Shown one piece after another: positions 2,723-61,494 of a stretch of 64,000 nt of DNA (the first letter of the stretch is position 1; the number at the start of each line of letters is the position of its first letter). Origin of the DNA: Schmidtea polychroa (Eukaryota); the NCBI GenBank assembly GCA_044892525.1, contig CM097887.1, forward strand, positions 1,302,001 through 1,366,000, written 5' to 3'. The notes below the pieces were generated by a model. The model was not told where the DNA came from. It saw only the letters and a program-made list of their open reading frames with translations, and did not search any database. Position numbers and translations under genes: made by a program.

Positions 2723-2723
2723 C

Positions 2724-2868: not shown

Positions 2869-4007
2869 TTATTGAATGCCAACATCCCCAGGTAAAGTAA
2901 GGCAATGTGAAATCCTTTCCTTGGCATAGAGCTTATTCAATGAATCGCCTTCAATGGGCAAAAATGAAATTTCACCCAATTTCAGGAACGCTTCCGAGCT
3001 TATTGTGTTCAAGTGAGCCAGCTGTTTGTATATATAAATGAGCATTTTCTCAATCAGAATCACATCGCCATCTTTGATCTCAGAGAACTGAAACATGATA
3101 TTGGTCCAAATGACATCGGCAAGAATGAAATCAGACGATTTCAAGATCGATTCGTCAAGTCCCACCATTAAATAGAGCATTTGAGATGTTTGGAAATTTA
3201 TAAATTGCTTCTCCTGTTCCCGAGTAAACTTTTTTGCACGTTTCTTCGTGTCCTTATAGAGCGTCTGAAAGGAATTCGTGTCAAAATGTGCTTTAATAAA
3301 TATCGCAATTATTCACATTCTAATTTCAGATTATTTCATACAAAAATTACTAAAAATGGCGGCCAATTGATGAATAATAACAAATGGCTGTATCATATCG
3401 AATGATTCCAATGTTTGTCTCTGTAATTACCAATTAATAAAATGGCACTTTTACATGATGACAAAAGTTTAATTATCGAAATCGAAGAATTTATGAAATC
3501 AATATTGAAATGACTAATAGAAATAAATTTAATCAACCAATCAAAATTCTGTATTGAAATAAAATAAAATTTAATTTCAAGGCTTTCAAATGTTACACTT
3601 ACATCAAACATAACATATTTGGCCATTCTACCCTCTATTCCTTCATCTTCCAATCTCAATCCAATCATCCAAACATGAATACACATCATTGTAAACCAAG
3701 TCTGATAGCAATCTGGCAATTTAAAATAATTTAGATAAGTAGAAAATTCGGGATACTCTAAGAAATAATAGATATATTATTTCATACATCAAATTCAATT
3801 ACCTGCTGCAATAGCATACAACTTTGCGCCAGATCCATAGATCTCTCGTTCTCTAAATCTTATTTTAGTAAGTCCAACGCCTATTTTGACATATTCCCAA
3901 GCAGATAAACCAATTCCAGAAAAGTTTACTTCCTTTTTCCCATAATGTTGTGATAAAACGATTATTGGTTTGAATTTACATATATTTGTAATTGCCCTTC
4001 TGAGCAT
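2869..4007 (-). CDS. UQCC1: Ubiquinol-cytochrome c reductase complex assembly factor 1 (Cbp3 family), 3 exons, ~251 aa
   Basis: Exons 4007-3803, 3757-3603 and 3264-2869 join in frame via GT-AG introns. Motifs LPDCYQTWFTMMCIHVWMIGLRL, GLDESILKSSDFILADVIW and YIYKQLAHLNTI match the Cbp3/UQCC1 pattern. The N-terminus (MLRRAITN...) is basic and resembles a mitochondrial transit peptide. Confidence 0.88.
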
Positions 4008-4656
4008 TTGAAAAAACAACCTTGAATCTAAACAATCTTTAATTCATTTAAAGTTTAAACTATAATGAAAATTATAAATCTTAATTTTCAACAATATTTT
4101 ATTAAAAATTCATAAAACTTTCAATAACCTTTGATTTATTTAAGAAACAAAGAAGTTTTTCAAGACAAAATTCATAATCAAGTACAAATTATGAAATTAG
4201 TTATTAATTAAAAATCGAAAAGTAAGCACAATATATGACTATTGACAACTACAGTTAAGTAGAATAAAATAATTACTATCTAAGACACATTTATCCATAG
4301 AAAATATTTTTTATTTTCAAATTCTTTTCAATTGGTTTTTATAGTTTTAACCTGCCCACGCGCAATAAAAGTTTACAACTTAAAACTCTAAATTCTATTT
4401 TTCTTATTGTACAGAATAATATATCTGATCCGTAACAGATGCATCACCATCTCAACTCGACAATTTGATATATTTAGTACATTCAAATTGTCACCGGTCC
4501 AATCAAATATGATTATCAATAAAGAGATAATCAACCAATCAAATTCTATTAAATATATTTATAACAGCATCACCACCCGTGTCAAATCAACCCCAATAAA
4601 AACGGATGAAATTAAAATTAAAAATTACATCGCACTGAAAGACCGAAAGTAGTGCC

Positions 4657-6228
4657 TCACCATGGGCAACTATCGGGGAGGGCCTCAGCGCTATTGAATA
4701 TAAGGATGTTGCCGAGTTCTGTCAGTCGGGCAGCATCGCTAGGCAATTGTCCCAACACGAACAAATTCATGCCCATCTTTGGCTCGAACTTGTTGCCATA
4801 GGCGTCTTGAACGATGAAATGGTGAGCACGCAAATCGAACCGCTTGATAAGGTGCCGGGAGGAGTCAAGTGCGAACCAGCCCTCGTCATCCTCCCACCAT
4901 GGAAACGTACAGAAGAAATAGCAGGGACAGCCATCATCGAGTATCTGATTGATGCGATCTGCCACATTCTTCATTAGGTCATTCAGGAAGGGCGGGTTGA
5001 CCGACCAGCCGCCGCAATGCTCCCGCATATCCACATCAAAGAAATTGCCCAAACTCCCAAACACCCGATCTGTATCCGGGAACAAGCTGCAGAAATGCGT
5101 CTCATCGTACTCTGAATGCAACAATTACGATTTCAATTTAATAAAATGATAATAGCGAGAGTCAAAAAGAAACGGTTGCTATGGCTACCGGATAAATCCC
5201 AAAAGTCGGTTATGGGCACTCATTAGTCACGCAAATTGTCAAATATCAAATAAAGGGCAAACAAATGAACCTCACACACACGCACGCGCACACACAAACT
5301 GATTGCTTCAACCAATACAATTACGATAAGCGCCAAATCAATAATGCCCACCTATAAAGCGAGAATTCACTGGCGATGCGAATCCTTCGTGACGAACATT
5401 GAATTGATCGTAAAGAACTTTATGAACCTCCTTTGGATCACCCCATTGATAACTGCCGTTACCAAATGATTCGTAACGGAGGAGCATGCGAGCTGAGGCG
5501 ATAATTCCTCCCTTTGTGACGAGTAACTCGACACGTGGGACTTCGGGACTTTGAAATTTGTTGACAACGATGATTTTCCGGCTGCTATTGTATTCTACAT
5601 GGAGCGGTTCGGTTAGGTTATGAGGAATGACATTTGAATGATTTTTAGCTATAAACTTCAGGATTGCTTCTGTTTTCTCGTCAGCTTCGTCTACTGTCAC
5701 AAATCGTTTTTCTATAATTGCAGCTCTAAGAAACTGAGCTGCTGGGTCTTTTAGAGAGATTTTGGGTAAAATGGAGTAATATTCATATTTTGGAACGCGA
5801 TTAAAGTCTTCGTTTACGAAAATGAACCACCTTTGTAAGGTATTTGTAAACTCTTGTTCACCTTTTGAAGTAGAAATATTCATTAAATATTTTCCTTTCT
5901 CATATAATTTGTTATTGATAAAATCCCATTGAACATATTCTTTATATAATTCAATATCATTAGCTTGGTCTATAATTTTATTGTCTTCTTTGCTATTGCG
6001 CAACCTCCTTTCAGATTCCATATCATTATTTCTATCATTTTGACGTTTTTGTCTCTCTGAATTGGAATTAAGATCGTTTGATAATCGCTTTGAATTAATT
6101 TTATTTCTTAAGTCGGAGCTAGACAGACTACCGTTCATGTCACTATAGTTAGTCGTATTATTTCGATTGCTAGTATGATTTCTTTTAAATCTTTTATAAT
6201 CATGTTTATAAATTTGTTCATGCGACAT
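4657..6228 (-). CDS. PCIF1: PCIF1/CAPAM-like cap adenosine N6-methyltransferase domain protein, 2 exons, ~443 aa, no WW domain seen
   Basis: Exons 6228-5352 and 5111-4657 join in phase 1. They give EGFASPVNS, FCSLFPDTDRVFGSLGNFF, catalytic NPPF and F.PWW, the motif series of the PCIF1 methyltransferase domain. Orthology to animal PCIF1 is not established. Confidence 0.8.
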
Positions 6229-8735: not shown

Positions 8736-9189
8736 ATGAAATTGCTGATCCTGGTCGGTATCTTCGTGGCGTTGGCATTGGTTAATGTCGAATGCGTTAG
8801 CAAGTCAAAAAAAAGTAACCTATAAACTTGATAAAGATTTCCTAAACTTGCTTTTCATTTATTCAGATGTTGATTGCTTGTCGATGTTGGATAAGATTGA
8901 TAGGGAATGCGACAGGAAATATTTGATGCTCGACAGCAATTGTGACAGCCGTTACGCTTACTTGCACAAGGTTTGTGATATTAAATACGAGAAACTAAAA
9001 GGCCGATGCAAATTGAGGATGTCAATGCGTTGCATTCAAAAATATGGGAAGCTGGACAGGAAATGTCTGCGAGAATATGACAGAGTTGATAGCTTTTGTG
9101 ACCAAAGGTACAACGTATTGGATACTCATTGCGATGGCTTGTACAAGTTGCAGAAGAAATGTGAGGATAACAGTAAGGCGAAATTTTGA
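8736..9189 (+). CDS. Secreted cysteine-rich protein with 11-residue periodicity, 2 exons, ~133 aa
   Basis: ATG at 8736 encodes a signal-peptide-like MKLLILVGIFVALALVNVEC. A phase-1 intron 8815-8866 (GTAACC...TTATTCAG) joins in frame to VDCLSMLDK...; there are 10 Cys after the junction. Confidence 0.8.
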
Positions 9190-9421
9190 ATTGGTATAAT
9201 CTTATGATCTCAATTTCTAGGTAAATGAACTGTTGAATGTTTTTTATTCGTAATAGTTTTACCTTTCGCTGAGTTGAATAAATCCTTACTGTTATTTTTG
9301 TGTTTTATCATTTTTAATTACTCAATAATTAAAGAAAAAATTATTAAATTTTTATCTATTTGTGTGACCTTGACATTCATAAGTATTTTAATTTAATTGG
9401 ATTATGTTAATTATATATTTT

Positions 9422-12621: not shown

Positions 12622-12894
12622 NNNNNNNNNNNNNNNNNNNNNNNNNNNNNNNNNNNNNNNNNNNNNNNNNNNNNNNNNNNNNNNNNNNNNNNNNNNNNNN
12701 NNNNNNNNNNNNNNNNNNNNNNNNNNNNNNNNNNNNNNNNNNNNNNNNNNNNNNNNNNNNNNNNNNNNNNNNNNNNNNNNNNNNNNNNNNNNNNNNNNNN
12801 NNNNNNNNNNNNNNNNNNNNNNNNNNNNNNNNNNNNNNNNNNNNNNNNNNNNNNNNNNNNNNNNNNNNNNNNNNNNNNNNNNNNNNNNNNNNNN
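12622..12894. other. Assembly gap (N run)
   Basis: Run of N. Confidence 1.
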
Positions 12895-13286: not shown

Positions 13287-13288
<2 letters not shown>

Positions 13289-34800: not shown

Positions 34801-35002
34801 CCCTGGCCTCGTCCATATGCATCCGAATCTTGCATCTCGGTGGGTTCTGTTGCATTTCACCTCGAACGAGGAAGCATTGAAAGCATATAAAAATCTCTAC
34901 AACAAAGTCGGCGTTGTGGAACTGTTGGCAGATCAGGAAGTTAACCAGGTAATTCGTGGCCACCGAAACAATGGGGTAATTGATCATCACCCAATGTTTT
35001 AG
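28876..35002 (+). CDS. TNRC6: GW182/TNRC6 miRNA effector, 5 coding exons, ~1177 aa
   Basis: Exons 28876-30321, 31626-32460, 33012-33641, 33701-33892 and 34572-35002 join in frame. Features: Trp/Ser/Asn-rich N-terminus (DGWGSHTVDQSTPW, NGVGVWESHYEN), Q-rich middle, PAM2-like EFVPGQPWPG..DDPNVTLG, and a C-terminal RRM (VLIRDLPSHINVEML...FTSNEEALKAY). Confidence 0.88.
30437..30635. repeat. 30-bp intronic minisatellite (GGGGGACTTTTGAGGGTTTATTATTGATCC) x ~7
   Basis: Directly visible, inside GW182 intron 1. Confidence 0.95.
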
Positions 35003-42100: not shown

Positions 42101-45100
42101 ACCCGATTGACCCCGCTAATCAAGCCCCTAATCAGTGCGGTACGCTCCGAGCCATGCGTGACGCTCCAGACCGAGGCATGCATCGCATTGGCTCAACTTG
42201 TTGTCGACCATAATTCTCAGGCTCGACTGATTGCTCCCATCACTAAATTGGTGAACAATCTCCTCCAATACCAATCGGATGCGATCGATTCGTTGGCAAC
42301 AGGCCAACCGCATGACGAGGAGCAGCATGAAATCGTGGCCCTCTACAAGACATCGCAATTGGGCAGGGAGGCATTCCCTCGCCAGGAGGACAACCCTACT
42401 GCTGTTGCCATTGACAATGAAGTTTCCATTAAGCTGCGTGGGTCCCGCATGGCGCTGGAGAAGATTTACAGTCGATTTGTTTGCTCATCCGATCCAGATT
42501 TAGGCCATTCATTCCTGATGGAGATAATTTATCACGGCCCCCTCAAGCTGCTGGTGCACCAGGATCAGAACCATCCCCATGACAACAACATCAACAACAA
42601 CAGAATCATAGTGGCGCTGCGTGCCATGTCCACCTGCCTGCCATTCATCAAGCCAGCATCAAATAGATTACATCCAACAATATCATTCACCAGTTACGCT
42701 CAATCAATATTCCACATGGGCCTCTCACACATTGATCCAATCATTCGCCATTGGAGCGCTCGAGTGCTTGCTATCCTCATCATGCCGCAATCACCAACTG
42801 ACAATATCGAATTGTCCTCCAAATTGATCGATATCATTCTCCTCGGGGAAGCATTGAAAGCCCTGGAAACTAGCAGCAATGAGAAACTTTGTTGCGGCGC
42901 CATCGAGCTCCTCTATCTCGTGTGTCACAGTGGCCTGTTGCCATACCGACTGGCTATTGCTGTGATCGTGCTGCCAGTGGTGCTGGTCTGTCTGAATGCT
43001 CCATTTGATCCAGTGCGTCGCGTTGCAACTCATGTGTTCTCTCTCCTGCTCACCTTGCTGCCCCTTGAGTCATCTGGAGCGGACCTATCAATATTGACCC
43101 CAGCTAGACTCCACCAACGCAAGCAGCATCTCACATTTCTCGACAACCTGCTAAATCCTAAGCTGATTGGTCCATATAATGCCCATCAGGCGGTTGTAAG
43201 CGCCAAGCTCCGCCAATACCAAGAGGAGGGCGTCAATTGGCTGGGCTTCCTCAATCGATACGGTCTCCATGGGGTGCTTGCTGATGACATGGGGCTCGGC
43301 AAGACGTTGCAAGCGATCTGTGTGATAGCAGGAGAGTACAGTAGAGCACCAAGCACTTGCCCTCCATCACTCATTGTTTGTCCACCAACTCTCACTAATC
43401 ATTGGCAGCAGGAATTCAAACAGTTCCTCACTAATGTCCCTGATTTCCAGACAATTATCTACACAGGAACCCCAATGTATCGGCAGTGCATTTACAGTGG
43501 TCTCTGGCGTCATCAAGTTGTTATCACATCGTATGACACGCTTCGTAGCGATATCAATTTGCTGGCTAGGCCCGCATTCTCTCACTGTGGCGGCGGTACC
43601 AATGCAGGTACCAATGCAGGTACCAACGGCAGCACCAATCAGGACCAATCAGTTGCATCGAGTGCTGTGTGGAACTATATCGTGCTCGATGAGGGACACC
43701 TCATCCGCAACTACAAGAGCAAGGTTGCCATAGCAACAAAGTCGCTATGTGCCCGGCACCGGCTGGTGCTCACCGGAACGCCGATACAGAACCGAGTCGG
43801 TGAGTTGTGGTCGCTATTTGATTTCCTGATGCCAGGGCTGCTGGGAACGCGCACAGAATTCAATCGGCGCTACGGACGGCTGCTAGAGCAAAACGGGTCG
43901 AATTGCGGCAGGAAAGTTGACAGTGAGGCTGGTACCGCTGCCCTTGAATTGTTGCATCGACAAGTGTTACCATTCATGTTGCGACGGGTTAAGGATGATG
44001 TGCTCCAGGAGTTACCAGCTAAGATAATGCAGGATTACATGTGTACAATGAGCCCATTACAATTGCGCCTCTATACTCATTGCATCCAATCACAGGCAAT
44101 CTCAGATTCCATTGGTCCAGATTTCACTGGCCTCATGGACGGCAGCAGCAGCGGATCAATCAATCAGCACCATCACGGGTTCCAGGCAATGCATTATTTG
44201 CGGCTGGTATGCAACCATCCAAGCTTGGGCCTGACCAGCAGTCACCCATTGCATCGCACCATCATGAGAGAGCTCGCTACCAACAATCAATCTATCGATG
44301 ATATCAATCTGTCTGGGAAACTCGTTGCTTTGAGGTAAGGATTTCTATTGGCTGTTGATCACTCGGTTGGGGGGGGCCGCATATATGTGTGTGTATATTG
44401 ATTGGCTACTGATCACTCGTTTGGGGGGGGGTAGCGCATATATATGTGTATATTGATTGGTTGTTGATCTATTGGTTGGGGGGGGGGCGCATATATGTGT
44501 GTGTATTGATTGGCTGCTGATCACTCGTTGGGGGGGGGCGCATATATATGTGTGTATATTGATTGGTTGTTGATCTATTGGTTGATTGCAGACAGCTGAT
44601 TCTTGATTGCGGCATCGGTGTCAGTGGCTATGGCAACGGTAACACCAACGGCAACGAGGAGGGTGAGGAAGGGGAGAATGACACAGTGAGTAGCGTTGTT
44701 GCTAGCAACCGGTTGCTGGTGTTCTGTCAATCCATCAAGATGATGGAGTTGGTGGAGAGAATGATTCGGTTGGTGGTCATTTATTTGATGATATATAAAT
44801 ATTATTGATTTGGTTCCTTGTCTACCCTATAGTAGCGATATGCCCAAGGCAACTCATCTGAGGCTGGATGGCTCGGTTCCTGTGAGGGACAGGCAACGGA
44901 TCGTGGACAAATTCAGCTCTGACGCGTCAATTGATATATTGCTATTGACAACGAGCATCGGTGGGCTCGGGCTCAACCTGACATCGGCAAACATTGTGAT
45001 ATTTGTTGAGCACGATTGGAACCCGATGCGTGACCTGCAGGCAATGGATCGTGCTCACCGTATCGGACAGAAACACACGGTCATTGTTTATCGATTGATC

Positions 45101-45409
45101 ACAGCACAATCGATCGAGGAGAAGATTATGAACCTGCAGGAATTCAAAAAGTTCGTTGCTAATGCGGTTGTTAGCAAAGACAATAAGCAGATGGGCTCGA
45201 TGAACACGGAAAATATTCTGGACATCATGAACAAGGATGCGAATTGGCCAGCGCCATCCACAGCAATGACAAACAGCAAGCCAAACAGTGGCGGAACAGC
45301 AGTACAGCTCAGTAAGATCAGCAAAGCAGAAAGCGGGGAACGCTCATATGAATGCCTCAGTGAATACGACCAGGAGTATAATTTGGATAGTTTTGTAAAG
45401 AAATTATAA
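39178..45409 (+). CDS. BTAF1: TATA-binding protein-associated factor 172 / Mot1 SNF2 ATPase, 11 exons, ~1829 aa
   Basis: Exons 39178-39188, 39244-39364, 39419-39656, 39703-39818, 39860-39933, 39985-40231, 40286-40381, 40439-40615, 40679-44334, 44592-44768 and 44833-45409 join in frame. N-terminus MASRLDKLFELL..RNAAAIQIG; WEIRHGAA; DFVSDEMVAPVRESCAQALG; Walker A DDMGLGKT; DEGH; HDWNPMRDLQAMDRAHRIGQ. Confidence 0.95.
44345..44590. repeat. ~57-62 bp intronic minisatellite x ~4 (ATTGG..GATC..G-run..GCATATAT(GT)n)
   Basis: Directly visible; fills BTAF1 intron 44335-44591. Confidence 0.85.
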
Positions 45410-45856: not shown

Positions 45857-45898
<42 letters not shown>

Positions 45899-49973: not shown

Positions 49974-50310
49974 TTAAATTGGTGTTTGAGTATTTTTAGC
50001 TACTATCAATTCATTGAAATGTTTCTTACAATAGAGGATTCCTTTGTCTTGGGCATAATTATTCAGTCTGATAATTTACAGATTAATAAACTCACAGAAT
50101 ATCAATTATAATTCTTACTTTAATGACATGTCACATTGAGCACATCGAAAACAAAGTCTGTGCCATATCAAACTCCCAGCTTCCATTCTTTCATTAGCAT
50201 AGACAGATTTCTTGCATCTTTCACACTTCTCATTAGTTGACTAGAATGAATATCAGCAATTAAAATGTGAAGAAAATGAGAAAAAACAAAATTCTAACTG
50301 TAAACGGCAT
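49974..50310 (-). CDS. Single-LIM-domain small protein, 3 exons, 75 aa
   Basis: Exons 50310-50299, 50240-50119 and 50067-49974 splice in frame to MPFTSTNEKCERCKKSVYANERMEAGSLIWHRLCFRCAQCDMSLKLNNYAQDKGILYCKKHFNELIVAKNTQTPI. All 8 LIM zinc ligands (C-x2-C..H-x2-C-x2-C-x2-C..C-x2-H) are present. Confidence 0.92.
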
Positions 50311-51149: not shown

Positions 51150-51400
51150 TCATGCACCTTTGCTGCAATTTAATGGCAACACGAAGCATTGTGGAGTTGT
51201 AGCTGTTGGTGTAATAGATATCCACATCATCACAAGCGACCTTGATACTATCCAGCTTGAATGGAACCAGAAAAACAAAGATGAGAACCTCACGGGCCTC
51301 CTAAAATATAAATCCATTTGATTCAACGTGTCAACCGAAGGATACAAAACATATTTTGACCCGATCAAATATTAAAGTTCTGCCTATTGCACAATAACGC
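51150..51400 (+). pseudogene. Possible LINE apurinic endonuclease remnant
   Basis: LLQFNGN...DIHIITSD loosely resembles the N-terminal ILQWN..DI.. motif of LINE APE domains; interrupted by stops. Confidence 0.25.
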
Positions 51401-51709
51401 TGTAAGTTCAGTACTCATTTCCATGGATTATTCCTTACTGTCCTTATCATTAAAGGTGTGTAACCCTGGAACCGATCAGTTTAATTAATCATACAATTAG
51501 GCAAACCACAATGTGGAACAACCTCCTCACTCGGCTCCTCCCCTAATGCCTATGCCAAGCTTTTCCATTAGTTCACTGTTGGCCACTTAATTTCAATTTC
51601 TTTTCATGGGTTTTTATCCTCTTACTTTGGTGCCTCAATCATATTACCTTTGTAAGGGTTCTAAACCTATAATATTCCATGCAGCAAGTTATCTGGCAGG
51701 CCAGTAAGT

Positions 51710-54700
51710 AAGCCCCCCCTTAAACGCAAGTCTGCCCCCCCCCCAAATAAAAAAACGGACATGAATAAAAAATTACATTCAATATGTTTGATAAAAGAAA
51801 AATTGCTATCGTGCACACATGCATTGACATGGGTGTGCATGAGTTGCACATGTAGAGGTTTATGTAGTGTGGACGGGGGTAGGATGTTCCATCTATCTGC
51901 CTCACTGGAAGAGACTGGCATATGAAGTCGGTGGCGTGGGTAGGGTGCGTGCTGTCTGTGTTTCCTGACTCACAGGCAGTAACAACGCATGGAGGCATGA
52001 TTGAGTGTCAGAGCACGGAGTGGGTGCATTGTGGTCTTTATACGATGGTAGAGAGATAGGCCAATGAGCAGAGTGACATGTTAATTGATCATATTTTGTA
52101 ACATTATTTTCATCGTATTAGAACATGTCGACACAAAAAAGTATCATGAATTTCTTCCAAGTCATTCCAAAGAATTCTGTGACTTCAGTCACTTCATCCA
52201 GTGATAGTATCTCTGCTACTATGTCCTCAACTTGTGCTAGTCCTTCATCTGTACCTGCTATTTCATGTATCCGTGACAGTGCAGTGATGTCCTCATCTTC
52301 TTGTGCACCTGCTAAGACTCTGTCATCTACTAAATGTGATCTGGGTGAAGAAATGCCACGCCAGCCAACTGATGTAAATTTCCCAAAGACTTCGTTTGGT
52401 TCAAGGGAACGCTCATTTTCGTCTGTGTGGTATAATGGAAGACCATATTTGGAGTACTCTATTGAGAAAGATGCAGTCTTCTGCTTTTGCTGTAGAAAAT
52501 TTTCATTGCCCGGCTCTGCTGGCGAAAGTGCTTTCAGAACAGGAGGATTCCGAAATTGGAAATCGGCTTTAGAAAAAGGAAAAGGTTTTCAAAAACATGA
52601 ATCTTCTGCTGGCCACATCCATGCCATGGAACGCTGGAAAGAGAAACAGCTGAGATGTGAAAAAGGTGAGGAAGTTTGCACTTTGATTAATGAAACACAG
52701 CTGAAGAACAACCGTTATTATGTCAACGAAATCGTTGACGTTGTAAAGTTTCTTGTGACAAATGAATTAGCCTTTCGTGGTGACAGTTTCAGTAGAGATG
52801 ATATTGATGAGGATGATAAGCTTCCGTGTGGTCTATTTTTACGTCTCTTCGAATACACTGTTAAGAAAAATCCTGAGCTGGCTCGAATCATTAAAACGAT
52901 TCCCAAAATTGCCACGTACACATCACCTCGAATTCAAAATGAAATTATCGCGTTAATGGCATCAATAGTGCAAGAGTCAATTGTTAAGAAGTGCAAGTCT
53001 GCGGATGTTGAATATTTTACTCTGAAGGTGGATGGTACCAAAGATCGAACAGGGACTGAGAATGTGTCGATTGCCATAAGGTTTGTCTCAGCAGGACAAC
53101 CTCAGGAGCACTTAATCTGCATTTCCCGAACAATTGCTCTCAATGCAGAGGCCTTCACAGATGTAATTTTGACAACCTTGAAAGAGGCTCAGTTGGATCC
53201 TAAAAATATAATTTCCCAATGCTATGATGGAGCCGCTGTTATGTCTGGACAGCATGGTGGGGTGCAGGCCTTGCTTCAGGAGCGTCTACAAAAAGAAATT
53301 CCGTATGTCCATTGCTTCAACCACAAGTTGCATTTGGTTGTTGTGTGTGCCGTTTCTGAGTGCCAAAAACTGCGGGACTTCTTCGACATATGCAGAAACT
53401 TATACACATTTTTGTCATATCCTAAGGTTGCGGCCATATATCAAGGCGATAAATTGACACGGCTCATGGAACATCGTTGGACAGGACACTTGCAGACGAC
53501 TCAGGCAATAACAACTAATTATGATACAATTGTGAATTTGCTTGAGATGTGTTCTAGTAGACATTCTCACTTTTCAATTGATATTCAATTGGAAGCTACT
53601 GGACTCTTGCATCGAGTCAATGAAGTGGAGTTTCAGTTCATTGCACACATGGTGCTCTCATTGCTGACTATCCTTGAAACAGCCAACAATAGCTTGCAGG
53701 GTCAAGCAATGGACCTTTCTTCAGCATGTGATGTTATGGATGCCGTCATAGAGCGCATTCGCAGCCTACGCAATGAAGAGGAATTCCAAGTTCTTTTTGG
53801 GAAATTCGAAGGTCAAATGGATATGGAACGGACACTAAAAAGAAGAAGAACTCAGATGAACTCAAAATTAGACAACTTCATTGTGTTCGGATCTGTGGGA
53901 CAGCCAGAACACCAGGCCTTGCCTATCAGATGCGCATATCGCCAGATGTATTACGAAGTCGTTGATAGGACTCTGCAGGAACTAACAAAACGCTTCGGTG
54001 TCACCAACAGAAGCCTTTATAAGTCTCTTGCATGTTTGAAGACTGATCACGCAAACTTTTTGAATATTGAGGATCTCAAGACTTTAGCGACACTGTGTGG
54101 CGTGGACCTAAGCGAAACCCAATATGAATTTGAAACTGCAAAGGTTTTCCTATTGAAGAGAGCCAGTACTGTGACAAACGTTCATCAGTTAGTGCAAGAA
54201 CTGTACTCATACCGAGATGCTTTTCCATCTGTCTATCGTCTTGCAGCTTCTGCACTGACAATCGGTGCTTCAACTGCCACATGTGAGGCGACTTTCAGTA
54301 CTTTATCTCGTGTCTTAACTCCCTTTCGTACGTCGATGAGCCATTCTCGTAAAGCCAACCTTGTATTGCTCTCATTTGAAAGTGACATCAGTAATAACAT
54401 CAAATCTGATGAGTTTCTTCGGCGGTTTCATGAAATGAAAAATCGTCGACTGCAGCTATTTTCAGTCATGTCGATATCTCACACACGTAATTTCTTTTTT
54501 CTGGATCTAGTTCCTGTGTAATTTCTATTGCACTCACCTTTAGTTTTCAAATCTGTGTGACTGTGTGTTCTGTCTTTGTATGTCCAATTGTCCGTCGTGC
54601 AAATACATACAGCTATTTGTTTTTTGTGTTTGTTCCTAAAAAATGTGCGAAAATCATTTCCTATATACTAGTATATGCAATAATGTAGCAAAATAATGCT

Positions 54701-54871
54701 CAGACAAAATGTCGATTTTGCTTTCCTTTTTTTTAAATTGAACATTTCGGAGTGCAAAGTGTGAGTAGTGACTAGTCTGTATTCATAAAATACTTAGTTT
54801 ACACGAGAATTACTGGCCCCTTTAATGAGAGTCTGGGCCCCCCCGTCAAAAGGTGTCACGGTACGGGGCTG
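51710..54871 (+). mobile_element. hAT DNA transposon carrying an intact transposase ORF
   Basis: Right end ...GTACGGGGCTG is hAT-like. An 8-bp direct repeat CAGTAAGT at 51702-51709 and 54872-54879 is a candidate TSD. The left terminus (AAGCCCC) matches only imperfectly, so that boundary is tentative. Confidence 0.7.
52125..54521 (+). CDS. hAT transposase (ZMYM1-like: TTF-type zinc finger, DUF4371-like core, hATC dimerisation domain), 798 aa
   Basis: Uninterrupted ORF with LEYSIEKDAVFCFCC, KHESSAGH, catalytic D (LKVDGTKD), D (QCYDGAAVMSG), CxxH (HCFNH), RW (EHRWTGH) and E (ATCEATFS). Confidence 0.92.
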   Translation: MSTQKSIMNFFQVIPKNSVTSVTSSSDSISATMSSTCASPSSVPAISCIRDSAVMSSSSCAPAKTLSSTKCDLGEEMPRQPTDVNFPKTSFGSRERSFSSVWYNGRPYLEYSIEKDAVFCFCCRKFSLPGSAGESAFRTGGFRNWKSALEKGKGFQKHESSAGHIHAMERWKEKQLRCEKGEEVCTLINETQLKNNRYYVNEIVDVVKFLVTNELAFRGDSFSRDDIDEDDKLPCGLFLRLFEYTVKKNPELARIIKTIPKIATYTSPRIQNEIIALMASIVQESIVKKCKSADVEYFTLKVDGTKDRTGTENVSIAIRFVSAGQPQEHLICISRTIALNAEAFTDVILTTLKEAQLDPKNIISQCYDGAAVMSGQHGGVQALLQERLQKEIPYVHCFNHKLHLVVVCAVSECQKLRDFFDICRNLYTFLSYPKVAAIYQGDKLTRLMEHRWTGHLQTTQAITTNYDTIVNLLEMCSSRHSHFSIDIQLEATGLLHRVNEVEFQFIAHMVLSLLTILETANNSLQGQAMDLSSACDVMDAVIERIRSLRNEEEFQVLFGKFEGQMDMERTLKRRRTQMNSKLDNFIVFGSVGQPEHQALPIRCAYRQMYYEVVDRTLQELTKRFGVTNRSLYKSLACLKTDHANFLNIEDLKTLATLCGVDLSETQYEFETAKVFLLKRASTVTNVHQLVQELYSYRDAFPSVYRLAASALTIGASTATCEATFSTLSRVLTPFRTSMSHSRKANLVLLSFESDISNNIKSDEFLRRFHEMKNRRLQLFSVMSISHTRNFFFLDLVPV

Positions 54872-56240
54872 CAGTAAGTGCTGACAGGATTTGCTGTTGG
54901 TCTCTCCGCAGGTCTGATCCTGTATTGGGACTCCTAGTCTTAATCTGTTGAAATCCCCACATAAACCCCTAACAAATCATCATTATAAAATCGCGTAACC
55001 GAACTTAATCTATACAGAAGTATGAGGAATAAGAATTGATCACATATCATCACCCAAGCAATGATTTGATGCCTTCAATGAGCCCAAAATCTCATATAGC
55101 AAACTGAAACTCAACTGAGCATAAAAGCCGCCTGATGTCAAATAAGAAAACCATTGATAGGAGTGATATGGTTGTTTAGAGTGGTGCAAAAAGAAATTGA
55201 AATACAGAGAGAATTGATATAAATCGATAAAATGGGCAAAATTTATTAAAATTTATAATGATTGGAATATTGTGGGAGAATCTGTGTGAATGAGAAATAA
55301 TGAGACAAATACGAATACAATTAATATAAAATCAATTGGTGATATGCGAGCTATTTGGAAACCCCAAGCGATAAATGAGAAAAATAATGAAAATCAATAA
55401 TGGGATTTGATTTCCTTACAATCAAATTAGCTCAACAAAGCCTTTGGATATAAAGGTGATAAATTTTGTTTGGTTTATAAAAGACATTGATGGACAATTG
55501 CCATTTGGTTGAAGGTAAAATTCGGATGAGATTTATTCAAAAAATAGTCAAAGAGAAAAGCGTCTACCTTATCACGTTCTATTTGACGATATTGCTAGAG
55601 ATGACGGTGATGTATAATGATTAGTGTCATAGTTCTAATATAACCAGAGAGCACGCGGAGTCAGATTGTGGAACCGAATTGACAATAATAACCCAATAGA
55701 AGGTAAAATGGAAAATAAAGGAGTGATTAAAGGTTTTTACCTTTGCGGTAACCGTTCGGTACAAGCTTGAGCCATCATTTGGCCCTTTCCTTGCCTGCTG
55801 CGTACGCCATGCACCGAGGCGTGATTCCAGCACATAAAGCATGAAGGAATCCAGTAAAGGAGAGCGCGGTGATGCCAAGCACGACGGGAAGCGATCGAGA
55901 GCAATAATGGCAATGAAGGACGAGCAATTTGCATTAATCGTGGAGATAAAATATCACCAGAAGCACGAAATGCAATCATTATCAATCAGCGCAACCATAG
56001 CAACGCAGCTCAGAGTTCAATGGAGAATTAGCAGCCATCTGATTGGCCATCATATAGAGCAACCTGGTAACCATTAGTAACTCACCTATGAAATGAACCA
56101 ATGAAAATGCTTGCCTACTGATTGCTAGGCAACAAACAATTGATCAAACAAAATTAATCTATTTATTGAATAATTGCGATGAGAAATCACAAAACATACA
56201 AATCAATATATCGATATAAGGCACATCAGCATCAGCCTCA

Positions 56241-59200
56241 TCATTTATCCTCACTGGCAACCCGGCGGATCTTCTCATAGCCCTCGGTGATTGGCTCATC
56301 CGGCAGCTTATGCAGGTCATCATTCCTGATAATTGTGTTGCCATCGAGATCAACTGACAGATTGGAGGCGCCGAATTCAGCACTGAGCGTGGCAGCAGAT
56401 GATTCGAATGGTTTAGCAGTGAGCAACTGGCTGGCTTGGTCCAGCTGCACAACATCTAACTGGCGCAGCAATGTTATCGCCTCCGTTAGATCAACATATA
56501 AATTGGCCGATGCATTCCTGAATGTTCCCTCGCAATTTGCAATGGCCCACTGACGCACCTGGGCCTCGAGTTCCCGCTGTGAGATGCCGCCGCCGCTGCC
56601 TGCATATTGATGATGTCAATGGCCAATCAATGATCAATATATATATATATATATGGTTGTGTGTGTGTGAGGCAGCGGGGGGGGGGCACAATCACTCATT
56701 TATAGTGAAAGATATCAATGCGATCATTTCATCCATGCAATTGCACACACACAGAGCATCCATGCAATTGCACACACACAGAGCATCCATGCAATTGCAC
56801 ACACACACAGAGCATCCATGCATTTGCACACACACACCGAGCATCCATGCAATTGCACACACACACCGAGCATCCATGCAATTGCACACACACACAGAGC
56901 ATCCATGCAATTGCACACACACACAGAGCATCCATGCAATTGCACGCACACACACACAGAGCATCCATGCAATTGCACACACACACACAGAGCATCCATG
57001 CAATTGCACACACACAGAGCATCCATGCAATTGCACGCACACACACACAGATCATCCATGCCATTGCACACACACACACAGAGCATCCATGCAATTGCAC
57101 ACACACACAGAGCATCCATGCAATTGCACACACACACCGAGCATCCATGCAATTGCACACACACACCGAGCATCCATGCAATTGCACACACACCGAGCAT
57201 CCATGCAATTGCACACACACAGAGTACCATGCAATTGCACACACACACAGATCATCCATGCAATTGCACACACACACCGAGCATCCATGCAATTGCACAC
57301 ACACCGAGCATCCATGCAATTGCACACACACAGAGTACCATGCAATTGCACACACACACAGATCATCCATGCAATTGCACACACACACCGAGCATCCATG
57401 CAATTGCACACACACCGAGCATCCATGCAATTGCACACACACAGAGCATCCATGCAATTGCACACACACACCGAGCATCCATGCAATTGCACACACACCG
57501 AGCATCCATGCAATTGCACACACACAGAGCATCCATGCAATTGCACACACACACAGATCATCCATGCAATTGCACACACACACCGAGCATCCATGCAATT
57601 GCACACACACAGAGCATCCATGCAATTGCACACACACAGAGCATCCATGCAATTGCACACACACAGAGCATCCATGCAATTGCACACACACCGAGCATCC
57701 ATGCAATTGCACACACACACCGAGCATCCATTTAATTGCACACACACCGAGCATCCATGCAATTGCACACACACAGAGTACCATGCAATTGCACACACAC
57801 AGAGCATCCATGCAATTGCACACACACAGAGCATCCATGCAATTGCACACACACACACACCGAGCATCCATGCAATTGCACACACACACAGAGCATCCAT
57901 GCAATTGCACACACACCGAGCATCCATGCAATTGCACACACACACAGAGCATCCATGCAATTGCACACACACAGAGCATCCATGCAATTGCACACACACA
58001 GAGCATCCATGCAATTGCACACACACACAGATCATCCATGCAATTGCACACACACACCGAGCATCCATGCAATTGCACACACACCGAGCATCCATGCAAT
58101 TGCACACACACAGAGCATCCATGCAATTGCACACACACACACAGATCATCCATGCAATTGCACACACACACCGAGCATCCATGCAATTGCACACACACAG
58201 AGTACCATGCAATTGCACACACACAGAGCATCCATGCAATTGCACACACACAGAGCATCCATGCAATTGCACACACACACACACCGAGCATCCATGCAAT
58301 TGCACACACACACAGAGCATCCATGCAATTGCACACACACCGAGCATCCATGCAATTGCACACACACACAGAGCATCCATGCAATTGCACACACACAGAG
58401 CATCCATGCAATTGCACACACACAGAGCATCCATGCAATTGCACACACACACAGATCATCCATGCAATTGCACACACACACCGAGCATCCATGCAATTGC
58501 ACACACACCGAGCATCCATGCAATTGCACACACACAGAGCATCCATGCAATTGCACACACACAGAGCATCCATGCAATTGCACACACACACCGAGCATCC
58601 ATGCAATTGCACACACAGAGCATCCATGCAATTGCACACACACAGATCATCCATGCAATTGCACACACACACCGAGCATCCATGCAATTGCACACACACA
58701 CCGAGCATCCATGCAATTGCACACACACAGAGCATCCATGCAATTGCACACACACAGAGCATCCATGCAATTGCACACACACACACCGAGCATCCATGCA
58801 ATTGCACACACACACAGATCATCCATGCAATTGCACACACACACAGAGCATCCATGCAATTGCACACACACAGAGCATCCATGCAATTGCACACACACAG
58901 AGCATCCATGCAATTGCACACACACAGAGCATCCATGCAATTGCACACACACAGATCATCCATGCCATTGCACACACACACAGAGCATCCATGCAATTGC
59001 ACACACACACCGAGCATCCATGCAATTGCACACACACACAGAGCATCCATGCAATTGCACACACACACAGAGCATCCATGCAATTGCACACACACACAGA
59101 GCATCCATGCAATTGCACACACACACAGAGCATCCATGCAATTGCACACACAGAGCATCCATGCAATTGCACACACACACAGAGCATCCATGCAATTGCA

Positions 59201-61494
59201 CACACACACAGAGCATCCATGCAATTGCACACACACACAGAGCATCCATGCAATTGCACACACACAGCATATTATCGATTAATTCCAATTCTCCTTGGAT
59301 TCACAGATAGAAATTATCCATCAGCTATGCCGGTTGCGCAGTGCCAGAAATATAATCAATAATGTAAATATTAATAATTGATCAGTAGTTACCACCAGGC
59401 TGAGCGAGGACGTGAACATATGCCAGCAGAGACTCCTTGAATATCTCATCTTGCACACGATCGGCTAGCACACTGATCACACCTCGATTATTGGCAATTA
59501 TCGATCGGTAATTCAGGTCTGATCGCCACTTCCAATAGCTTGTTTTCTTGCTCTGGATCTGCATGCGAATATCAATCAATCAATATCGAGATAATGATGG
59601 CAATCAATTATAGATTATACAATGCTCTTTCATTATTTTAGGTTCGGATGTCTCATGCTGCTATTGGCTAGCAATAAAAATACAACGCAAGTGCAACAAT
59701 TAAAGGGAGACAGAAAGGCAATGAGAAAGCAAGTGAAAGGCAATGAGAAAGCAACAGAAATGCAATGAGAAAGCAAGAGAAAGGCAATGAGAAAGCAACA
59801 GAAAGGCAATGAGAAAGCAACAGAAATTCAATCAGAAAGCAACAGAAATGCAATGAGAAAGCAACAGAAAATGCAATGAGAAAGCAACAGAAAATGCAAT
59901 GAGAGAGCATCAGAAATGCAATGAGAGAGCATCAGAAATGCAATGAGAAAGCAACAGAAATGCAATGAGAGAGCATCAGAAATGCAATGAGAGAGCATCA
60001 GAAATGCAATGAGAAAGCAACAGAAATGCAATGAGAAAGCAGCATGAATGCAATGAGAGAGCATCAGAAATGCAATGAGAGAGCATCAGAAATGCAATGA
60101 GAGAGCATCAGAAATGCAATGAGAAAGCAACAGAAATGCAATGAGAAAGCAGCATGAATGCAATGAGAGAGCATCAGAAATGCAATGAGAGAGCATCAGA
60201 AATGCAATGAGAAAGCAACAGAAATGCAATGAGAGAGCATCAGAAATGCAAATAGGAAATGAAACTAACAACATTCCAATGGAACAGGCCGACAGCTGCA
60301 GAGAGCATTGCCAATGATGTGGCTAGGTGATGAGTGGAATTGAGCAAGCCTGATTCCAGTGCTGGCATGGGCAGCACCGAGTGAACGAGCCAACCTGATG
60401 CAAGCAGGACACCAGTCCAGAATAGGATAGAGTTATCAGTGGCCGAGTGCTTCATCATGACCTGTGGGATCGTGTGGATCAGCTGGCCCTCACTCAGCTC
60501 CTTGAACATCTTCAGCTCGATCTTATTGGCGTTGTGTAGGCGGGTGGCCACGACAACCCTCCTGAATGAGAGGGAGGGGAGAGAGATAATGATGTGTGTG
60601 CGTGTGTGTGTCATATGCAATACTTGTATGTGTGCCCCACGCGGAACGGGTTGACCCTGCCGCCAAGCGCAGCCCGTATCCCTAGGCCCAGCCGCAACCC
60701 CAGCCCATCCAGCAGCCCCCGCATCCTCCCCGCAACCCGCACATCCTCCCTGCCAAGGATCCACACCTTCAGCAACTCATATTGAGCACCATCAACCCAG
60801 ACCTGCAATATAGAACCGCCAATCAATCACAATATCATCATCACCAATCAATCACCTGGAGCGTGTTGAATCCACCCTCGCAATGGAGCAATTTCCCGAG
60901 CTCGGTGCGATTCAATTCACTGAAGTTCCCCAGCTCCATCATCCTAGACAGTTTCTGTACCAGCCAGAACTCCTCATCGAGCACCTGCCGGCGAGCAAGA
61001 GCTTGCTTCACTCCTCCTGAAGCCACTTCAACATCAGGATTCAAATGCTCATAGCTTGCCTATCATTATCACACAAATATTCCCCATCAGTTCTTTGCCT
61101 CATTTCATCAATTAAGCTTTACTTGGACTTCTTTCAGGAAGAAATGATTGCGATTGTAAATGCATGCTTCAAGGTACTTGTTGAACTCCTCAAATACTGT
61201 CAAATTGCTCGAGCCGACCAAATCCGGATTCTGGGAGAGCTTCCTAATGACTGTGGAACGAGCTAAAGGGATAAACTGTTCCCTAGTAGAATGAATATAT
61301 TAATAGGCATTCCACACAAACTGACTGTCACACTTGATACGAGCAACATTATCTGACGGTGAAATTCTAATCACACCGAAATCCAGAGATTTAACTTTAT
61401 TGAAATTCGACGAACGCAATTGAATAAATTTTACTAAATCTGACAGTCGATTAGCTTTTGTCAACATTGCTGTGAGCTGTTTCAGTCGTTCCAT
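56241..61494 (-). CDS. TMEM143: Transmembrane protein 143 (DUF3754 family), 7 exons, ~505 aa
   Basis: Exons 61494-61334, 61282-61123, 61059-60856, 60802-60624, 60561-60273, 59558-59393 and 56599-56241 join in frame. The ordered motifs EQFIPLAR, YEHLNPD, GNFSEL, QYELLKVWILG, YKRVVVATR..LKMFKE, two hydrophobic helices and YRSIIANN...RVQDEIFKESLLAY match TMEM143 as recalled. Confidence 0.85.
56730..59265. repeat. ~2.5-kb intronic satellite, unit GAGCATCCATGCAATTG(CA)n, ~25-31 bp, roughly 95 units
   Basis: Directly visible; fills most of TMEM143 intron 6 (59392-56600). Confidence 0.97.
59700..60250. repeat. 22-bp intronic satellite (GAAATGCAATGAGA[A/G]AGCA[A/T]CA) x ~25
   Basis: Directly visible; inside TMEM143 intron 5. 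Confidence 0.95.

What the first reader, a model, noticed from the sequence alone, without database searches (positions are those of the whole stretch)
2869..61494. Reversed 5'-to-3' GC switch inside host genes
Four long genes on both strands start at near-intergenic AT levels and become GC-rich several hundred bp downstream, and UQCC1 shows a weaker version. Hand-counted 60-nt lines: BTAF1 39541 20% vs 41881 55% and 43741 67%; GW182 29461 27% vs 30181 52%; PCIF1-like 5881 22% vs 4981 58%; TMEM143 61381 27% vs 60661 73%. In GW182 and PCIF1 the switch falls inside one uninterrupted exon, so it is not an assembly join at an intron. Introns follow it too (the BTAF1 intron at 39365 is far more AT-rich than the one at 40616), so it is not only codon choice. 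The two short genes (LIM, Cys-rich) end before the switch distance and stay comparatively AT-rich. The best-known intragenic gradients (e.g. grasses) fall from 5' to 3'. Inference: a transcription-distance-dependent mutation, repair or conversion regime, such as gene-body-targeted mismatch repair (H3K36me3/MSH6-type) or recombination and GC-biased conversion directed into gene bodies, acting against a strong AT mutation bias.
Basis: partly seen in the sequence, partly recalled or inferred. Interest (0 to 1): 0.8.

Follow-up and report, generated by a model that had tools for sequence, protein, structure and literature searches.

The report
Gene bodies turn GC-rich after start
In this AT-rich, planarian-like stretch of DNA, all five multi-exon genes begin as AT-rich as the DNA between genes, turn markedly GC-rich about 0.5-0.9 kb after the start codon and stay so until about the stop codon; silent sites and introns shift too, which is the reverse of the known gene gradients and may point to a GC-favouring repair or recombination process confined to gene bodies.

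Summary
All nine hand counts reproduce exactly.

**What the window shows**
- A full BTAF1 model (10 exons, 1802 aa) has GC3 of 0.16-0.19 in its first exons and 0.46-0.66 afterwards.
- Pooled 4-fold-site GC is 0.20 in the 5' zones and 0.54 in the bodies (p = 7e-19).
- Introns rise from 0.27 to 0.42. Intergenic DNA is 0.30.
- Change points lie 468-869 nt after the ATG in five genes on both strands, whether the gene is 1.1 or 6.2 kb long.
- GC falls back within -33 to +120 nt of the stop codon in three genes.
- Five random anchors in the window match the mean rise with P of about 7e-4.

**What the evidence argues against**
- Chimeric assembly: reading frames run through the transitions.
- Methylation decay: CpG observed/expected is about 0.8 everywhere.
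- Strand-specific transcription-coupled repair: 4-fold sites show no skew.
- A codon-only effect: introns shift as well.

**Best reading (inferred)**
A GC-favouring process tied to elongation-type chromatin, most likely GC-biased gene conversion. The mechanism cannot be tested here.

**Caveats**
- Only five genes, from one window.
- An intact transposon and satellites are also GC-rich.
- 4-fold sites exceed introns.
- A short cysteine-rich gene has GC3 of 0.48 from its start.

The parts
39178..45409 (+). BTAF1/Mot1 gene, 10 exons, 1802 aa. Exons: 39178-39188, 39244-39364, 39419-39656, 39703-39818, 39992-40231, 40286-40381, 40439-40615, 40679-44334, 44592-44768, 44833-45409.
   Evidence: Pfam SNF2-rel_dom, DUF3535 and Helicase_C. 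The spliced model has no internal stop and starts MASRLDKLF. The intron 39819-39991 is the least certain junction.
39178..39990 (+). BTAF1 AT-rich 5' zone.
   Evidence: GC 0.29, exon GC3 0.16-0.19, introns 0.19-0.29. The maximum-likelihood change point is at 40047, 869 nt after the ATG, with a likelihood-ratio statistic of 132.
39991..45376 (+). BTAF1 GC-rich body domain.
   Evidence: Two-state model, GC state, GC 0.50. GC3 plateau 0.48-0.64 across the 3.66-kb exon. The 3' change point lies 33 nt before the end of the stop codon.
28879..35002 (+). GW182/TNRC6-like gene. Exon 1 is one open frame, 28804/28879-~30300. Later coding segments lie in 31626-32492, 32993-33673, 33631-33912 and 34565-34999; exact junctions were not resolved.
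   Evidence: Architecture only: 18 Trp in exon 1, mostly next to small or polar residues; a Q-rich stretch; a PAM2-like EFVPGQPW; an RRM-like C-terminus. No Pfam hit.
29590..35122 (+). GW182-like GC-rich body domain. It starts inside exon 1.
   Evidence: GC state, GC 0.45. Exon-1 GC3 is 0.18-0.24 for the first 750 nt, then 0.28, 0.34, 0.44, 0.52. Change point 711 nt after the ATG. Introns are 0.41-0.43 throughout, not only in their repeats. The 3' change point is 120 nt after the stop.
4657..6228 (-). PCIF1-like gene: exon 1 6228-~5345, exon 2 ~5112-4657. AT zone 6228-5618, GC-rich body 5617-4631.
   Evidence: PCIF1_WW split over both exons. GC3 is 0.26, 0.22, 0.28, 0.28, 0.50 in exon 1 and 0.62-0.68 in exon 2. 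Change point 611 nt after the ATG. GC state 4631-5748. The 3' change point is 26 nt after the stop.
60240..61494 (-). TMEM143-like gene, exon model approximate. AT zone 61494-61027, GC-rich body 61026-60240.
   Evidence: Weak DUF3754 hit. Exon GC3 is 0.34, 0.49, 0.60, 0.63. Change point 468 nt after the ATG. The GC state runs on past the stop into satellites.
2872..4007 (-). UQCC1 gene, a weaker version of the same rise.
   Evidence: Ubiq_cyt_C_chap in two exons. Exon GC3 is 0.22, 0.25, 0.46. Change point 725 nt after the ATG, likelihood-ratio statistic 13, borderline. GC state 2005-3166 extends about 870 nt beyond the stop and contains the N run 2591-2722.
51154..54969 (+). Intact hAT-type DNA transposon (transposase reading frame 52125-54521). 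It is a GC-state segment that is not a host gene body.
   Evidence: DUF4371 and the hAT dimerisation domain. GC 0.41-0.42, GC3 0.39 with no 5'-3' rise.
20753..21987 (-). Decayed hAT relic at background composition.
   Evidence: hAT dimerisation domain, E = 4e-11. GC 0.30-0.32, GC3 0.21-0.28.
56730..59267 (.). 27/29-nt minisatellite, about 90 units, GC 0.49, inside the GC-state block 55644-61361.
   Evidence: Tandem Repeats Finder; two-state model.
59710..60251 (.). 22-nt minisatellite that overlaps the TMEM143 stop codon by about 10 nt and runs on downstream.
   Evidence: Tandem Repeats Finder; sequence after the stop.
8785..9189 (+). Short Cys-rich secreted-type gene, 134 aa. A partial counter-example.
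   Evidence: GC 0.38 but GC3 0.44-0.53 from the first 150 nt, with AT-rich flanks.
50118..50240 (-). LIM-domain exon of a short gene at background composition.
   Evidence: C-x2-C...H-x2-C pattern; GC 0.37, GC3 0.32.
12622..12894 (.). Assembly gap, outside all five genes.
   Evidence: N run. The flanks 12451-12621 and 12895-13200 have GC 0.38-0.49. Continuity across the gap is not testable.

Best explanation
A GC-favouring process that acts on both strands and is not selection on codons operates on the bodies of these transcription units. It spares the first 0.5-0.9 kb after the start codon and fades at about the stop codon. Everything else, including the 5' zones, drifts to the AT-rich mutational equilibrium.

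The most likely form is GC-biased gene conversion. It would arise when breaks in elongation-marked (H3K36me3-type) chromatin are repaired by homologous recombination, in meiosis or in the stem cells that serve as the germ line of planarians.

**Shown here:** the compositional anatomy, meaning position, silent sites, introns, both strands, and both boundaries.

**Inferred:** the link to chromatin and the conversion bias. A population-scaled bias of about 1.6 would lift 4-fold GC from 0.20 to 0.54, and about 0.7 would lift introns from 0.27 to 0.42. This is my calculation from the mutation-drift-bias equilibrium formula.
For: - Change points lie 468-869 nt after the ATG in five genes of 1.1-6.2 kb on both strands. 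The same points are best when the whole gene is scanned.
- An ATG-anchored rise this large is rare for random anchors in the window, P = 7e-4.
- GC4 is 0.20 against 0.54, p = 7e-19.
- Introns are 0.27 against 0.42, and intergenic DNA is 0.30. GW182 introns are about 0.41-0.43 along their whole length.
- 4-fold sites in the bodies are A .25, C .28, G .26, T .21, so the process is strand-symmetric.
- CpG observed/expected is about 0.8 in all compartments.
- The BTAF1 gene of another animal has flat GC3, so the protein does not dictate the pattern.
- Four of the six minisatellites with units of 15 nt or more sit in the host-gene GC-state domains.
- In S. mediterranea transcripts, AT-to-GC variants are more often homozygous and reach higher frequency, which the authors read as GC-biased conversion (bioRxiv 10.1101/2023.03.20.533553).
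- In planarian stem cells H3K4me3 is promoter-proximal and H3K36me3 marks the bodies of expressed genes (PMC6169894). The mean H3K4me3 peak is 1184 bp (PMC11410931).
- That H3K36me3 channels breaks to homologous recombination is from my own knowledge of human-cell work and was not checked here.
Against: - There are only five genes, from one window, and no polymorphism, divergence or chromatin data for this locus.
- A flat plateau of 5.4 kb with sharp edges is unlike the peaked profile of classical conversion hotspots.
- 4-fold GC (0.54) is well above intron GC (0.42) in the same domains, so something linked to exons or coding adds to the effect.
- GC falls at the stop codon, while the first AATAAA/ATTAAA-type hexamers lie about 280-340 nt further on in BTAF1 and PCIF1. 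The 3' UTR therefore seems to be left out.
- The GC state also covers an intact transposon, satellites and 55644-56700, where no gene was recognised.
- No other note among 3193 on this genome mentions the pattern, so it may be local.
Confidence: 0.45

Rival explanations
1. Lower or biased mutation input in gene bodies. Chromatin-guided mismatch repair of the H3K36me3/MSH6 type, or another body-targeted repair, removes GC-to-AT changes. Bodies then keep an older, GC-richer state while the 5' zones and intergenic DNA have already decayed. This is a lag away from equilibrium.
For: - It predicts the same anatomy as the main explanation.
- The closest public BTAF1 relative, 53% identical against 37% or so for the next full-length hits, has GC 0.66 and GC3 0.84. 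A GC-rich ancestral state is therefore conceivable.
- An intact transposon at GC 0.42 beside a relic at 0.30 shows ongoing AT decay.
- Rare variants in the minisatellites are mostly GC-to-AT: 14 against 3, which are small numbers.
Against: - Lowering the rate alone does not change equilibrium GC.
- To hold GC3 near 0.55 while the 5' zones sit at 0.20, the body rate would have to be roughly five times lower. This is my estimate, and it exceeds what I recall being reported for such repair.
- The organism behind the GC-rich relative is unknown.
Confidence: 0.2
2. Selection for GC-richness of the transcribed body at the RNA or chromatin level. Candidates are avoidance of cryptic cleavage and polyadenylation signals in an AT-rich genome, export or stability of the RNA, nucleosome or exon definition, or GC-ending optimal codons.
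For: - Sense-strand AATAAA occurs once in 12.7 kb of bodies against 18 antisense (6 of them in one minisatellite). The 5' zones have 9 sense and 7 antisense.
- GC4 is higher than intron GC in the bodies.
- GC drops at the stop codon.
- The Cys-rich gene has GC3 of 0.48 in AT-rich surroundings, which hints at GC-ending preferred codons.
Against: - 2.9 kb of body introns are shifted too.
- The first 150-290 codons show no sign of it, with GC4 of 0.20, below intergenic GC. Codon ramps that I know of span about 50-150 codons.
- Removing hexamers does not require raising GC3 from 0.2 to 0.55.
- Part of the AATAAA asymmetry follows from TAA being forbidden in frame.
Confidence: 0.15
3. Local patchiness plus ordinary coding GC. 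This reading sees the window as a mosaic of 1-6 kb GC-richer patches (young transposons, satellites, unknown sequence) that happen to overlap the 3' parts of genes, with no process anchored to gene position.
For: - About 39% of the window is in the GC state, including non-genic DNA.
- Taken singly, the genes' ATG-anchored rises are only at the 2-14% tail of random anchors.
- No other window's note reports the pattern.
Against: - All five genes rise in the sense direction, on both strands, with change points in one 400-nt band, and the joint P is 7e-4.
- Three 3' boundaries fall within 120 nt of a stop codon.
- Intergenic DNA between the genes stays at 0.29-0.30.
Confidence: 0.1
4. Assembly chimera or contamination joining AT-rich and GC-rich sources.
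For: The window holds two N runs.
Against: - Transitions lie inside uninterrupted reading frames and are ramps, not joins.
- The BTAF1 model reads through as one 1802-aa protein.
- The N runs are outside the genes.
Confidence: 0.02

Closest known systems
5'-to-3' GC gradients of grass and other angiosperm genes, attributed to GC-biased conversion at 5' recombination hotspots (PMC4684703, PMC4316631, PMC5460877)
   Same: A strong intragenic gradient in GC3 that introns share. It is anchored to gene structure and is thought to be non-adaptive.
   Different: The polarity is reversed here: lowest at the 5' end, then a plateau to the stop codon. The shape is a step or ramp to a plateau, not a steady decline. 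Intergenic DNA stays AT-rich.
Chromatin-guided repair that lowers mutation in gene bodies: H3K36me3-MSH6 in human cells, and H3K4me1-linked repair in Arabidopsis (from my own knowledge; no paper was read here)
   Same: It predicts a regime that starts some hundred bases downstream of the TSS and covers the body of expressed genes, with exons marked more than introns.
   Different: Those systems are known from mutation rates, not from a large shift in base composition. Nothing here shows the mark, the reader protein or a rate difference.
GC-biased gene conversion reported in Schmidtea mediterranea (bioRxiv 10.1101/2023.03.20.533553)
   Same: The same kind of animal, by other agents' reading of this genome. 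The GC bias was seen in transcribed sequence and is proposed to act in stem cells.
   Different: That work does not describe where in genes the bias acts, nor any 5' exclusion zone. It rests on RNA-seq variants.
Isochore-like structure of Schistosoma mansoni (PMC5010904), and GC3 differences among flatworms (PMC6739440)
   Same: Compositional heterogeneity of silent sites in flatworm genomes.
   Different: I take those to be large regional or between-species differences; I saw only the abstract of the first paper. Here the domains are 1-5.5 kb, start inside genes, and leave the DNA between genes unchanged.
Weaker codon bias at the start of genes (the '5' ramp'; from my own knowledge)
   Same: Lower use of GC-ending codons at the 5' end of coding sequences in species whose preferred codons end in G or C.
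   Different: The ramp as I know it spans tens of codons to about 150, is modest, and does not involve introns. Here the zone is 150-290 codons, GC4 changes from 0.20 to 0.54, and introns follow.

Membership tests
Conversion-driven intragenic GC gradient (grass type) | GC3 changes systematically with position in the gene. | tested here: met
   Per-exon and sliding GC3 in five genes. GC4 is 0.20 against 0.54.
Conversion-driven intragenic GC gradient (grass type) | Non-coding sites (introns) share the gradient. | tested here: met
   Introns are 0.27 in the 5' zone and 0.42 in the bodies, p = 6e-8.
Conversion-driven intragenic GC gradient (grass type) | GC is highest at the 5' end and declines toward the 3' end. 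| tested here: not met
   The polarity is the opposite in all five genes.
Conversion-driven intragenic GC gradient (grass type) | AT-to-GC variants are favoured in frequency or fixation where GC is high, and recombination is concentrated there. | not testable with these tools
   No polymorphism, divergence or recombination data for this genome. No orthologous DNA could be fetched.
H3K36me3-guided gene-body repair | The domain coincides with the H3K36me3 mark of genes expressed in germ-line or stem cells. | not testable with these tools
   Only the general profile in S. mediterranea stem cells is known from PMC6169894, not this locus.
H3K36me3-guided gene-body repair | A lower mutation rate, or a changed spectrum, in bodies relative to 5' zones and flanks. 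| tested here: inconclusive
   Rare variants within the minisatellites are 14 GC-to-AT against 3 AT-to-GC overall, too few to compare compartments.
Gene-body DNA methylation decay | CpG depletion with TpG/CpA excess in the affected compartment. | tested here: not met
   CpG observed/expected is 0.77-1.08 in three bodies (0.50 in TMEM143's 860 nt), 0.59-1.20 in the 5' zones and 0.82-0.95 in intergenic DNA. The direction would also be wrong, since methylation lowers GC.
Transcription-coupled repair asymmetry | Strand skews at silent sites (G over C and T over A on the coding strand). | tested here: not met
   4-fold sites in the bodies are A .253, C .278, G .258, T .212. Coding-strand GC skew changes sign along BTAF1 and GW182.
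Translational codon-usage ramp | Confined to codons, and short. | tested here: not met
   Introns shift, and the zone spans 468-869 nt.
Isochores or isochore-like regions | Long domains in which genes and intergenic DNA share the composition. | tested here: not met
   Domains are 1.1-5.7 kb, and the intergenic DNA between them stays at 0.29-0.30.

The most novel reading that the evidence does not exclude
Planarian-type genomes may run a chromatin-guided, GC-biased recombination or repair system in their stem and germ cells. It would continually rewrite the bodies of expressed genes toward GC, starting about 0.7 kb after the start codon where promoter chromatin hands over to elongation chromatin. 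That would shield gene bodies from a strong AT mutation pressure and leave a genome-wide reversed GC gradient as its footprint.
Probability: 0.3. Interest if true: 0.8.

Novelty: new variant of a known kind. Interest (0 to 1): 0.6.

Why it matters
Intragenic GC gradients are one of the few sequence footprints that show where recombination or repair acts within genes. Every well-known case falls from 5' to 3' and is tied to promoter hotspots.

A rising gradient with a fixed exclusion zone of about 0.7 kb would point to a process aimed at elongation chromatin rather than promoters. It would occur in an animal whose adult stem cells act as its germ line and in which somatic GC-biased conversion has been proposed.

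It also has a practical side. Gene finders, codon-usage measures, dN/dS and tests of selection in these genomes would be biased if composition changes this much within a gene, and amino-acid use shifts with it. G, A, R and P together rise from 0.15 to 0.24, and F, Y, M, I, N and K together fall from 0.35 to 0.24.

The idea can be tested directly with public planarian assemblies, variant sets and ChIP-seq.

Tried and rejected
**Searches for comparative DNA**
- The exact-protein look-ups returned no DNA of this genome or of a close relative. The hAT transposase, P0014, the Cys-rich gene and GW182 exon 1 are not on record. P0001 and P0015 returned only L001 and L002 from other organisms.
- Both metagenome scans, with BTAF1 and with P0014, found no relative.
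- Protein searches gave only one relative with DNA: L001, 53% identical, GC3 0.84. Its contig starts beyond the switch, so it says nothing about a gradient.
- A spliced N-terminal BTAF1 query has no reference form and was not submitted. I left the third homologue search unused because success was unlikely.

**Organism identity**
- I could not establish the species myself. 'Planarian-like' comes from other agents' notes.
- Rfam and tRNA scans of the window found nothing.

**Analyses that led nowhere**
- Polarising mutations from minisatellite copies gave too few events.
- I looked for R-loop-type GC skew at the domain starts. It is positive in some genes but not consistent.
- A gene in 55644-56700, or in 2005-2870, that would explain those GC-state stretches was not recognised.

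**Ideas rejected**
- cDNA-mediated 3' conversion: introns are kept and are GC-rich, and the boundary sits near the 5' end even in 6-kb genes.
- De novo 5' extensions: the BTAF1 N-terminus, MASRLDKLF, reads like the N-terminus of human BTAF1 as I recall it (not tested here), yet it is AT-rich at silent sites.
- A 5'-specific mutator: the 5' zones simply match the background.

**Literature**
- Four searches found no report of a rising gradient in animals. This is not proof that none exists.

Full report
**1. What the window is**

The window has 35.4% GC and two N runs, at 2591-2722 and 12622-12894. A two-state composition model splits it into an AT state (GC 0.289) and a GC state (GC 0.459). The GC state covers 39% of the bases.

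The large GC-state domains are:
- 2005-3166
- 4631-5748
- 29590-35122
- 39991-45376
- 51154-54969
- 55644-61361

Other agents' notes on the same genome call it planarian-like, citing Burro-like giant retroelements and planarian-only families. I could not confirm the species. Background GC fits the 29.9% reported for Schmidtea mediterranea, whose coding average is 36.6% (PMC6739440).

**2. The genes**

- **BTAF1.** It is certain: SNF2-related domain, DUF3535 and Helicase_C. I built a complete model of 10 exons, 39178-45409, coding for 1802 aa that start MASRLDKLF, with no internal stop. Seven introns lie in the first 1.5 kb. They are followed by one exon of 3656 nt.
- **PCIF1.** It carries the PCIF1_WW domain across two exons, 6228-4657 on the minus strand.
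- **UQCC1.** It has the ubiquinol-cytochrome c chaperone domain.
- **TMEM143.** It rests on a weak DUF3754 hit, and its last exons are only roughly placed.
- **'GW182'.** It has no significant family hit. Its build fits: a Trp-rich, Ser/Asn-rich first exon with 18 Trp, a Q-rich stretch, a PAM2-like EFVPGQPW, and an RRM-like C-terminus.
- **Other features.** A LIM exon lies at 50118-50240 on the minus strand, and a 134-aa Cys-rich gene at 8785-9189. The segment 51154-54969 is an intact hAT transposon with a 798-aa transposase. The segment 20753-21987 is a decayed hAT relic.

**3.

All nine hand counts are exact. The shift is at silent sites.

| Gene | GC3 along the gene |
|---|---|
| BTAF1 (per exon) | 0.19, 0.16, 0.18, then 0.46, 0.53, 0.63, 0.56, 0.66, 0.56; plateau 0.48-0.64 across the long exon |
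| GW182 exon 1 (one open frame) | 0.18-0.24 for 750 nt, then 0.28, 0.34, 0.44, 0.52 |
| PCIF1 | 0.22-0.28, then 0.50, then 0.62-0.68 |
| TMEM143 | 0.34, 0.49, 0.60, 0.63 |
| UQCC1 | 0.22, 0.25, 0.46 |

- Pooled 4-fold-site GC is 0.20 in the 5' zones (n = 188) and 0.54 in the bodies (n = 1191), Fisher p = 7e-19.
- Introns follow: 0.27 in the 5' zone (327 nt) and 0.42 in the bodies (2870 nt), p = 6e-8. Intergenic DNA is 0.30.
- The long GW182 introns are 0.41-0.43 along their whole length, not only in their repeats.
- Amino-acid use shifts too. G, A, R and P together rise from 0.15 to 0.24, and F, Y, M, I, N and K together fall from 0.35 to 0.24.

**4. Position**

Maximum-likelihood change points, in nt after the ATG, are:
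- TMEM143: 468
- PCIF1: 611
- GW182: 711
- UQCC1: 725
- BTAF1: 869

For the two 6-kb genes the same points are the best ones when the whole gene is scanned.

The 150 nt before each ATG are extremely AT-rich, with GC 0.13-0.19 in all five genes.

At the other end, GC returns to background at -33 nt (BTAF1), +26 nt (PCIF1) and +120 nt (GW182) relative to the stop codon. In TMEM143 and UQCC1 the GC state runs on, into satellites and into an unexplained stretch around an N run.

Taken singly, each gene's ATG-anchored rise is at the 2-14% tail of random anchors in this heterogeneous window. Jointly, five random anchors match the mean rise with P = 7e-4.

The BTAF1 gene of an unrelated animal (L002) has flat GC3 of 0.37-0.49, so the protein does not impose the pattern.

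**5. What it is not**

- **Not an assembly join.** The transitions are ramps inside open reading frames, and the N runs lie outside the genes.
- **Not methylation decay.** CpG observed/expected is about 0.8 in bodies, 5' zones and intergenic DNA alike. S. mediterranea is reported to lack 5mC (PMC6169894).
- **Not transcription-coupled repair.** 4-fold sites in the bodies show no strand skew, and GC skew changes sign along the long genes.
- **Not a codon-only effect.** Introns shift, and the 5' zone spans 150-290 codons.
- **Not an isochore.** The DNA between the genes stays at 0.29-0.30.

**6. Most likely mechanism**

The 5' zones match the background and the bodies are the special compartment. 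What is needed, then, is a strand-symmetric, GC-favouring process that is switched on roughly where promoter chromatin gives way to elongation chromatin.

In planarian stem cells H3K4me3 is promoter-proximal and H3K36me3 marks the bodies of expressed genes (PMC6169894). H3K4me3 peaks average 1184 bp (PMC11410931).

GC-biased conversion has been inferred from S. mediterranea transcript variants. Homozygous variants are 53% GC and heterozygous ones 35% (bioRxiv 10.1101/2023.03.20.533553).

I therefore favour GC-biased conversion from homologous repair in gene-body chromatin, with confidence 0.45. All of this is inference.

- A modest bias suffices: a population-scaled coefficient of about 1.6 for 4-fold sites.
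- The main rival is body-targeted repair that lowers GC-to-AT input (0.2). It needs a non-equilibrium history and a rate difference of about fivefold. The GC-rich nearest relative (GC3 0.84) keeps it alive.
- Selection on the RNA or on chromatin (0.15) is suggested by four things: GC4 exceeding intron GC, the drop at the stop codon, one sense against 18 antisense AATAAA in the bodies, and the Cys-rich gene's GC3 of 0.48. It does not explain why the first 150-290 codons are exempt.
- Local patchiness (0.1) is kept in view because transposons, satellites and 55644-56700 are also GC-rich. No other note on this genome mentions the pattern.

**7. Comparison and novelty**

The plant gradients (PMC4684703, PMC4316631) share the silent-site and intron behaviour but have the opposite polarity. 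Codon ramps are, as I know them, short and confined to exons. Flatworm compositional studies (PMC6739440; PMC5010904, of which I saw only the abstract) do not treat within-gene gradients.

Four literature searches found no rising gradient in animals. I file this as a new variant of a known kind of feature, on thin sampling.

**8. Limits**

The evidence is one window and five genes. There are no variants, no outgroup DNA and no chromatin data for the locus. TSS and poly(A) sites are unknown. Exon junctions in GW182 and TMEM143 are approximate.

Noticed in passing
window 51154-54969: Apparently intact hAT-type DNA transposon with a 798-aa transposase reading frame (52125-54521; DUF4371, hAT dimerisation domain, a weak zinc-finger hit). 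GC is 0.41 against a background of 0.29. Its ends and target-site duplication were not examined.
   Followed up: partly
window 59710-60251 and 56730-59267: A 22-nt minisatellite overlaps the TMEM143 stop codon (60240-60242) by about 10 nt and runs on downstream, so the 3' UTR may consist of tandem repeats. About 440 nt further on lies a 2.5-kb array of 27/29-nt units (about 90 copies, CA-rich).
   Followed up: partly
window: the 150 nt upstream of the ATGs at 4007(-), 6228(-), 28879(+), 39236(+; first coding base of the earlier BTAF1 model, the ATG itself is at 39178), 61494(-): All five genes have an extremely AT-rich stretch (GC 0.13-0.19) just before the start codon, well below the intergenic 0.30.
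   Followed up: partly
window gene bodies 29590-35002, 39991-45409, 4657-5649, 60240-61099: Sense-strand AATAAA occurs once in 12.7 kb against 18 on the antisense strand (6 of them in one minisatellite). The 5' zones have 9 sense and 7 antisense in 3.1 kb. This may reflect avoidance of internal polyadenylation signals, and partly the in-frame ban on TAA.
   Followed up: partly
window 8785-9189: The short Cys-rich secreted-type gene has GC1 0.37 and GC2 0.28 but GC3 0.48 from its first codons, in AT-rich surroundings. This hints at GC-ending preferred codons in a probably highly expressed gene.
   Followed up: partly
window 39178-45409: BTAF1 has seven short introns (46-173 nt) in its first 1.5 kb, then a single 3656-nt exon. 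Intron positions are strongly biased to the 5' end and coincide with the AT-rich zone.
   Followed up: partly
window 30414-30668 and 44347-44584: GC-rich minisatellites (30-nt and 53/106-nt units, the latter with G9 runs) sit inside introns of the GC-rich bodies of GW182 and BTAF1.
   Followed up: no
window 26223-27704 and 46575-48192: Two copies of an old AT-rich dispersed repeat, 70-75% identical over about 1.5 kb. A shorter related piece lies at 7508-7737.
   Followed up: no
window 55644-56700 and 2005-2871: Two GC-state stretches with no recognised gene or repeat. The first has a 124-codon open stretch on the minus strand (56244-56615) without a family hit. The second surrounds the N run 2591-2722, just downstream of UQCC1.
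   Followed up: partly
L001 (Logan SRR33002330), 60-3920: The closest public relative of this BTAF1 (53% identical; the next full-length hits are about 37%) is a single 1286-codon open frame with GC 0.66 and GC3 0.84. A related lineage may therefore have very GC-rich gene bodies. The organism is unknown.
   Followed up: partly
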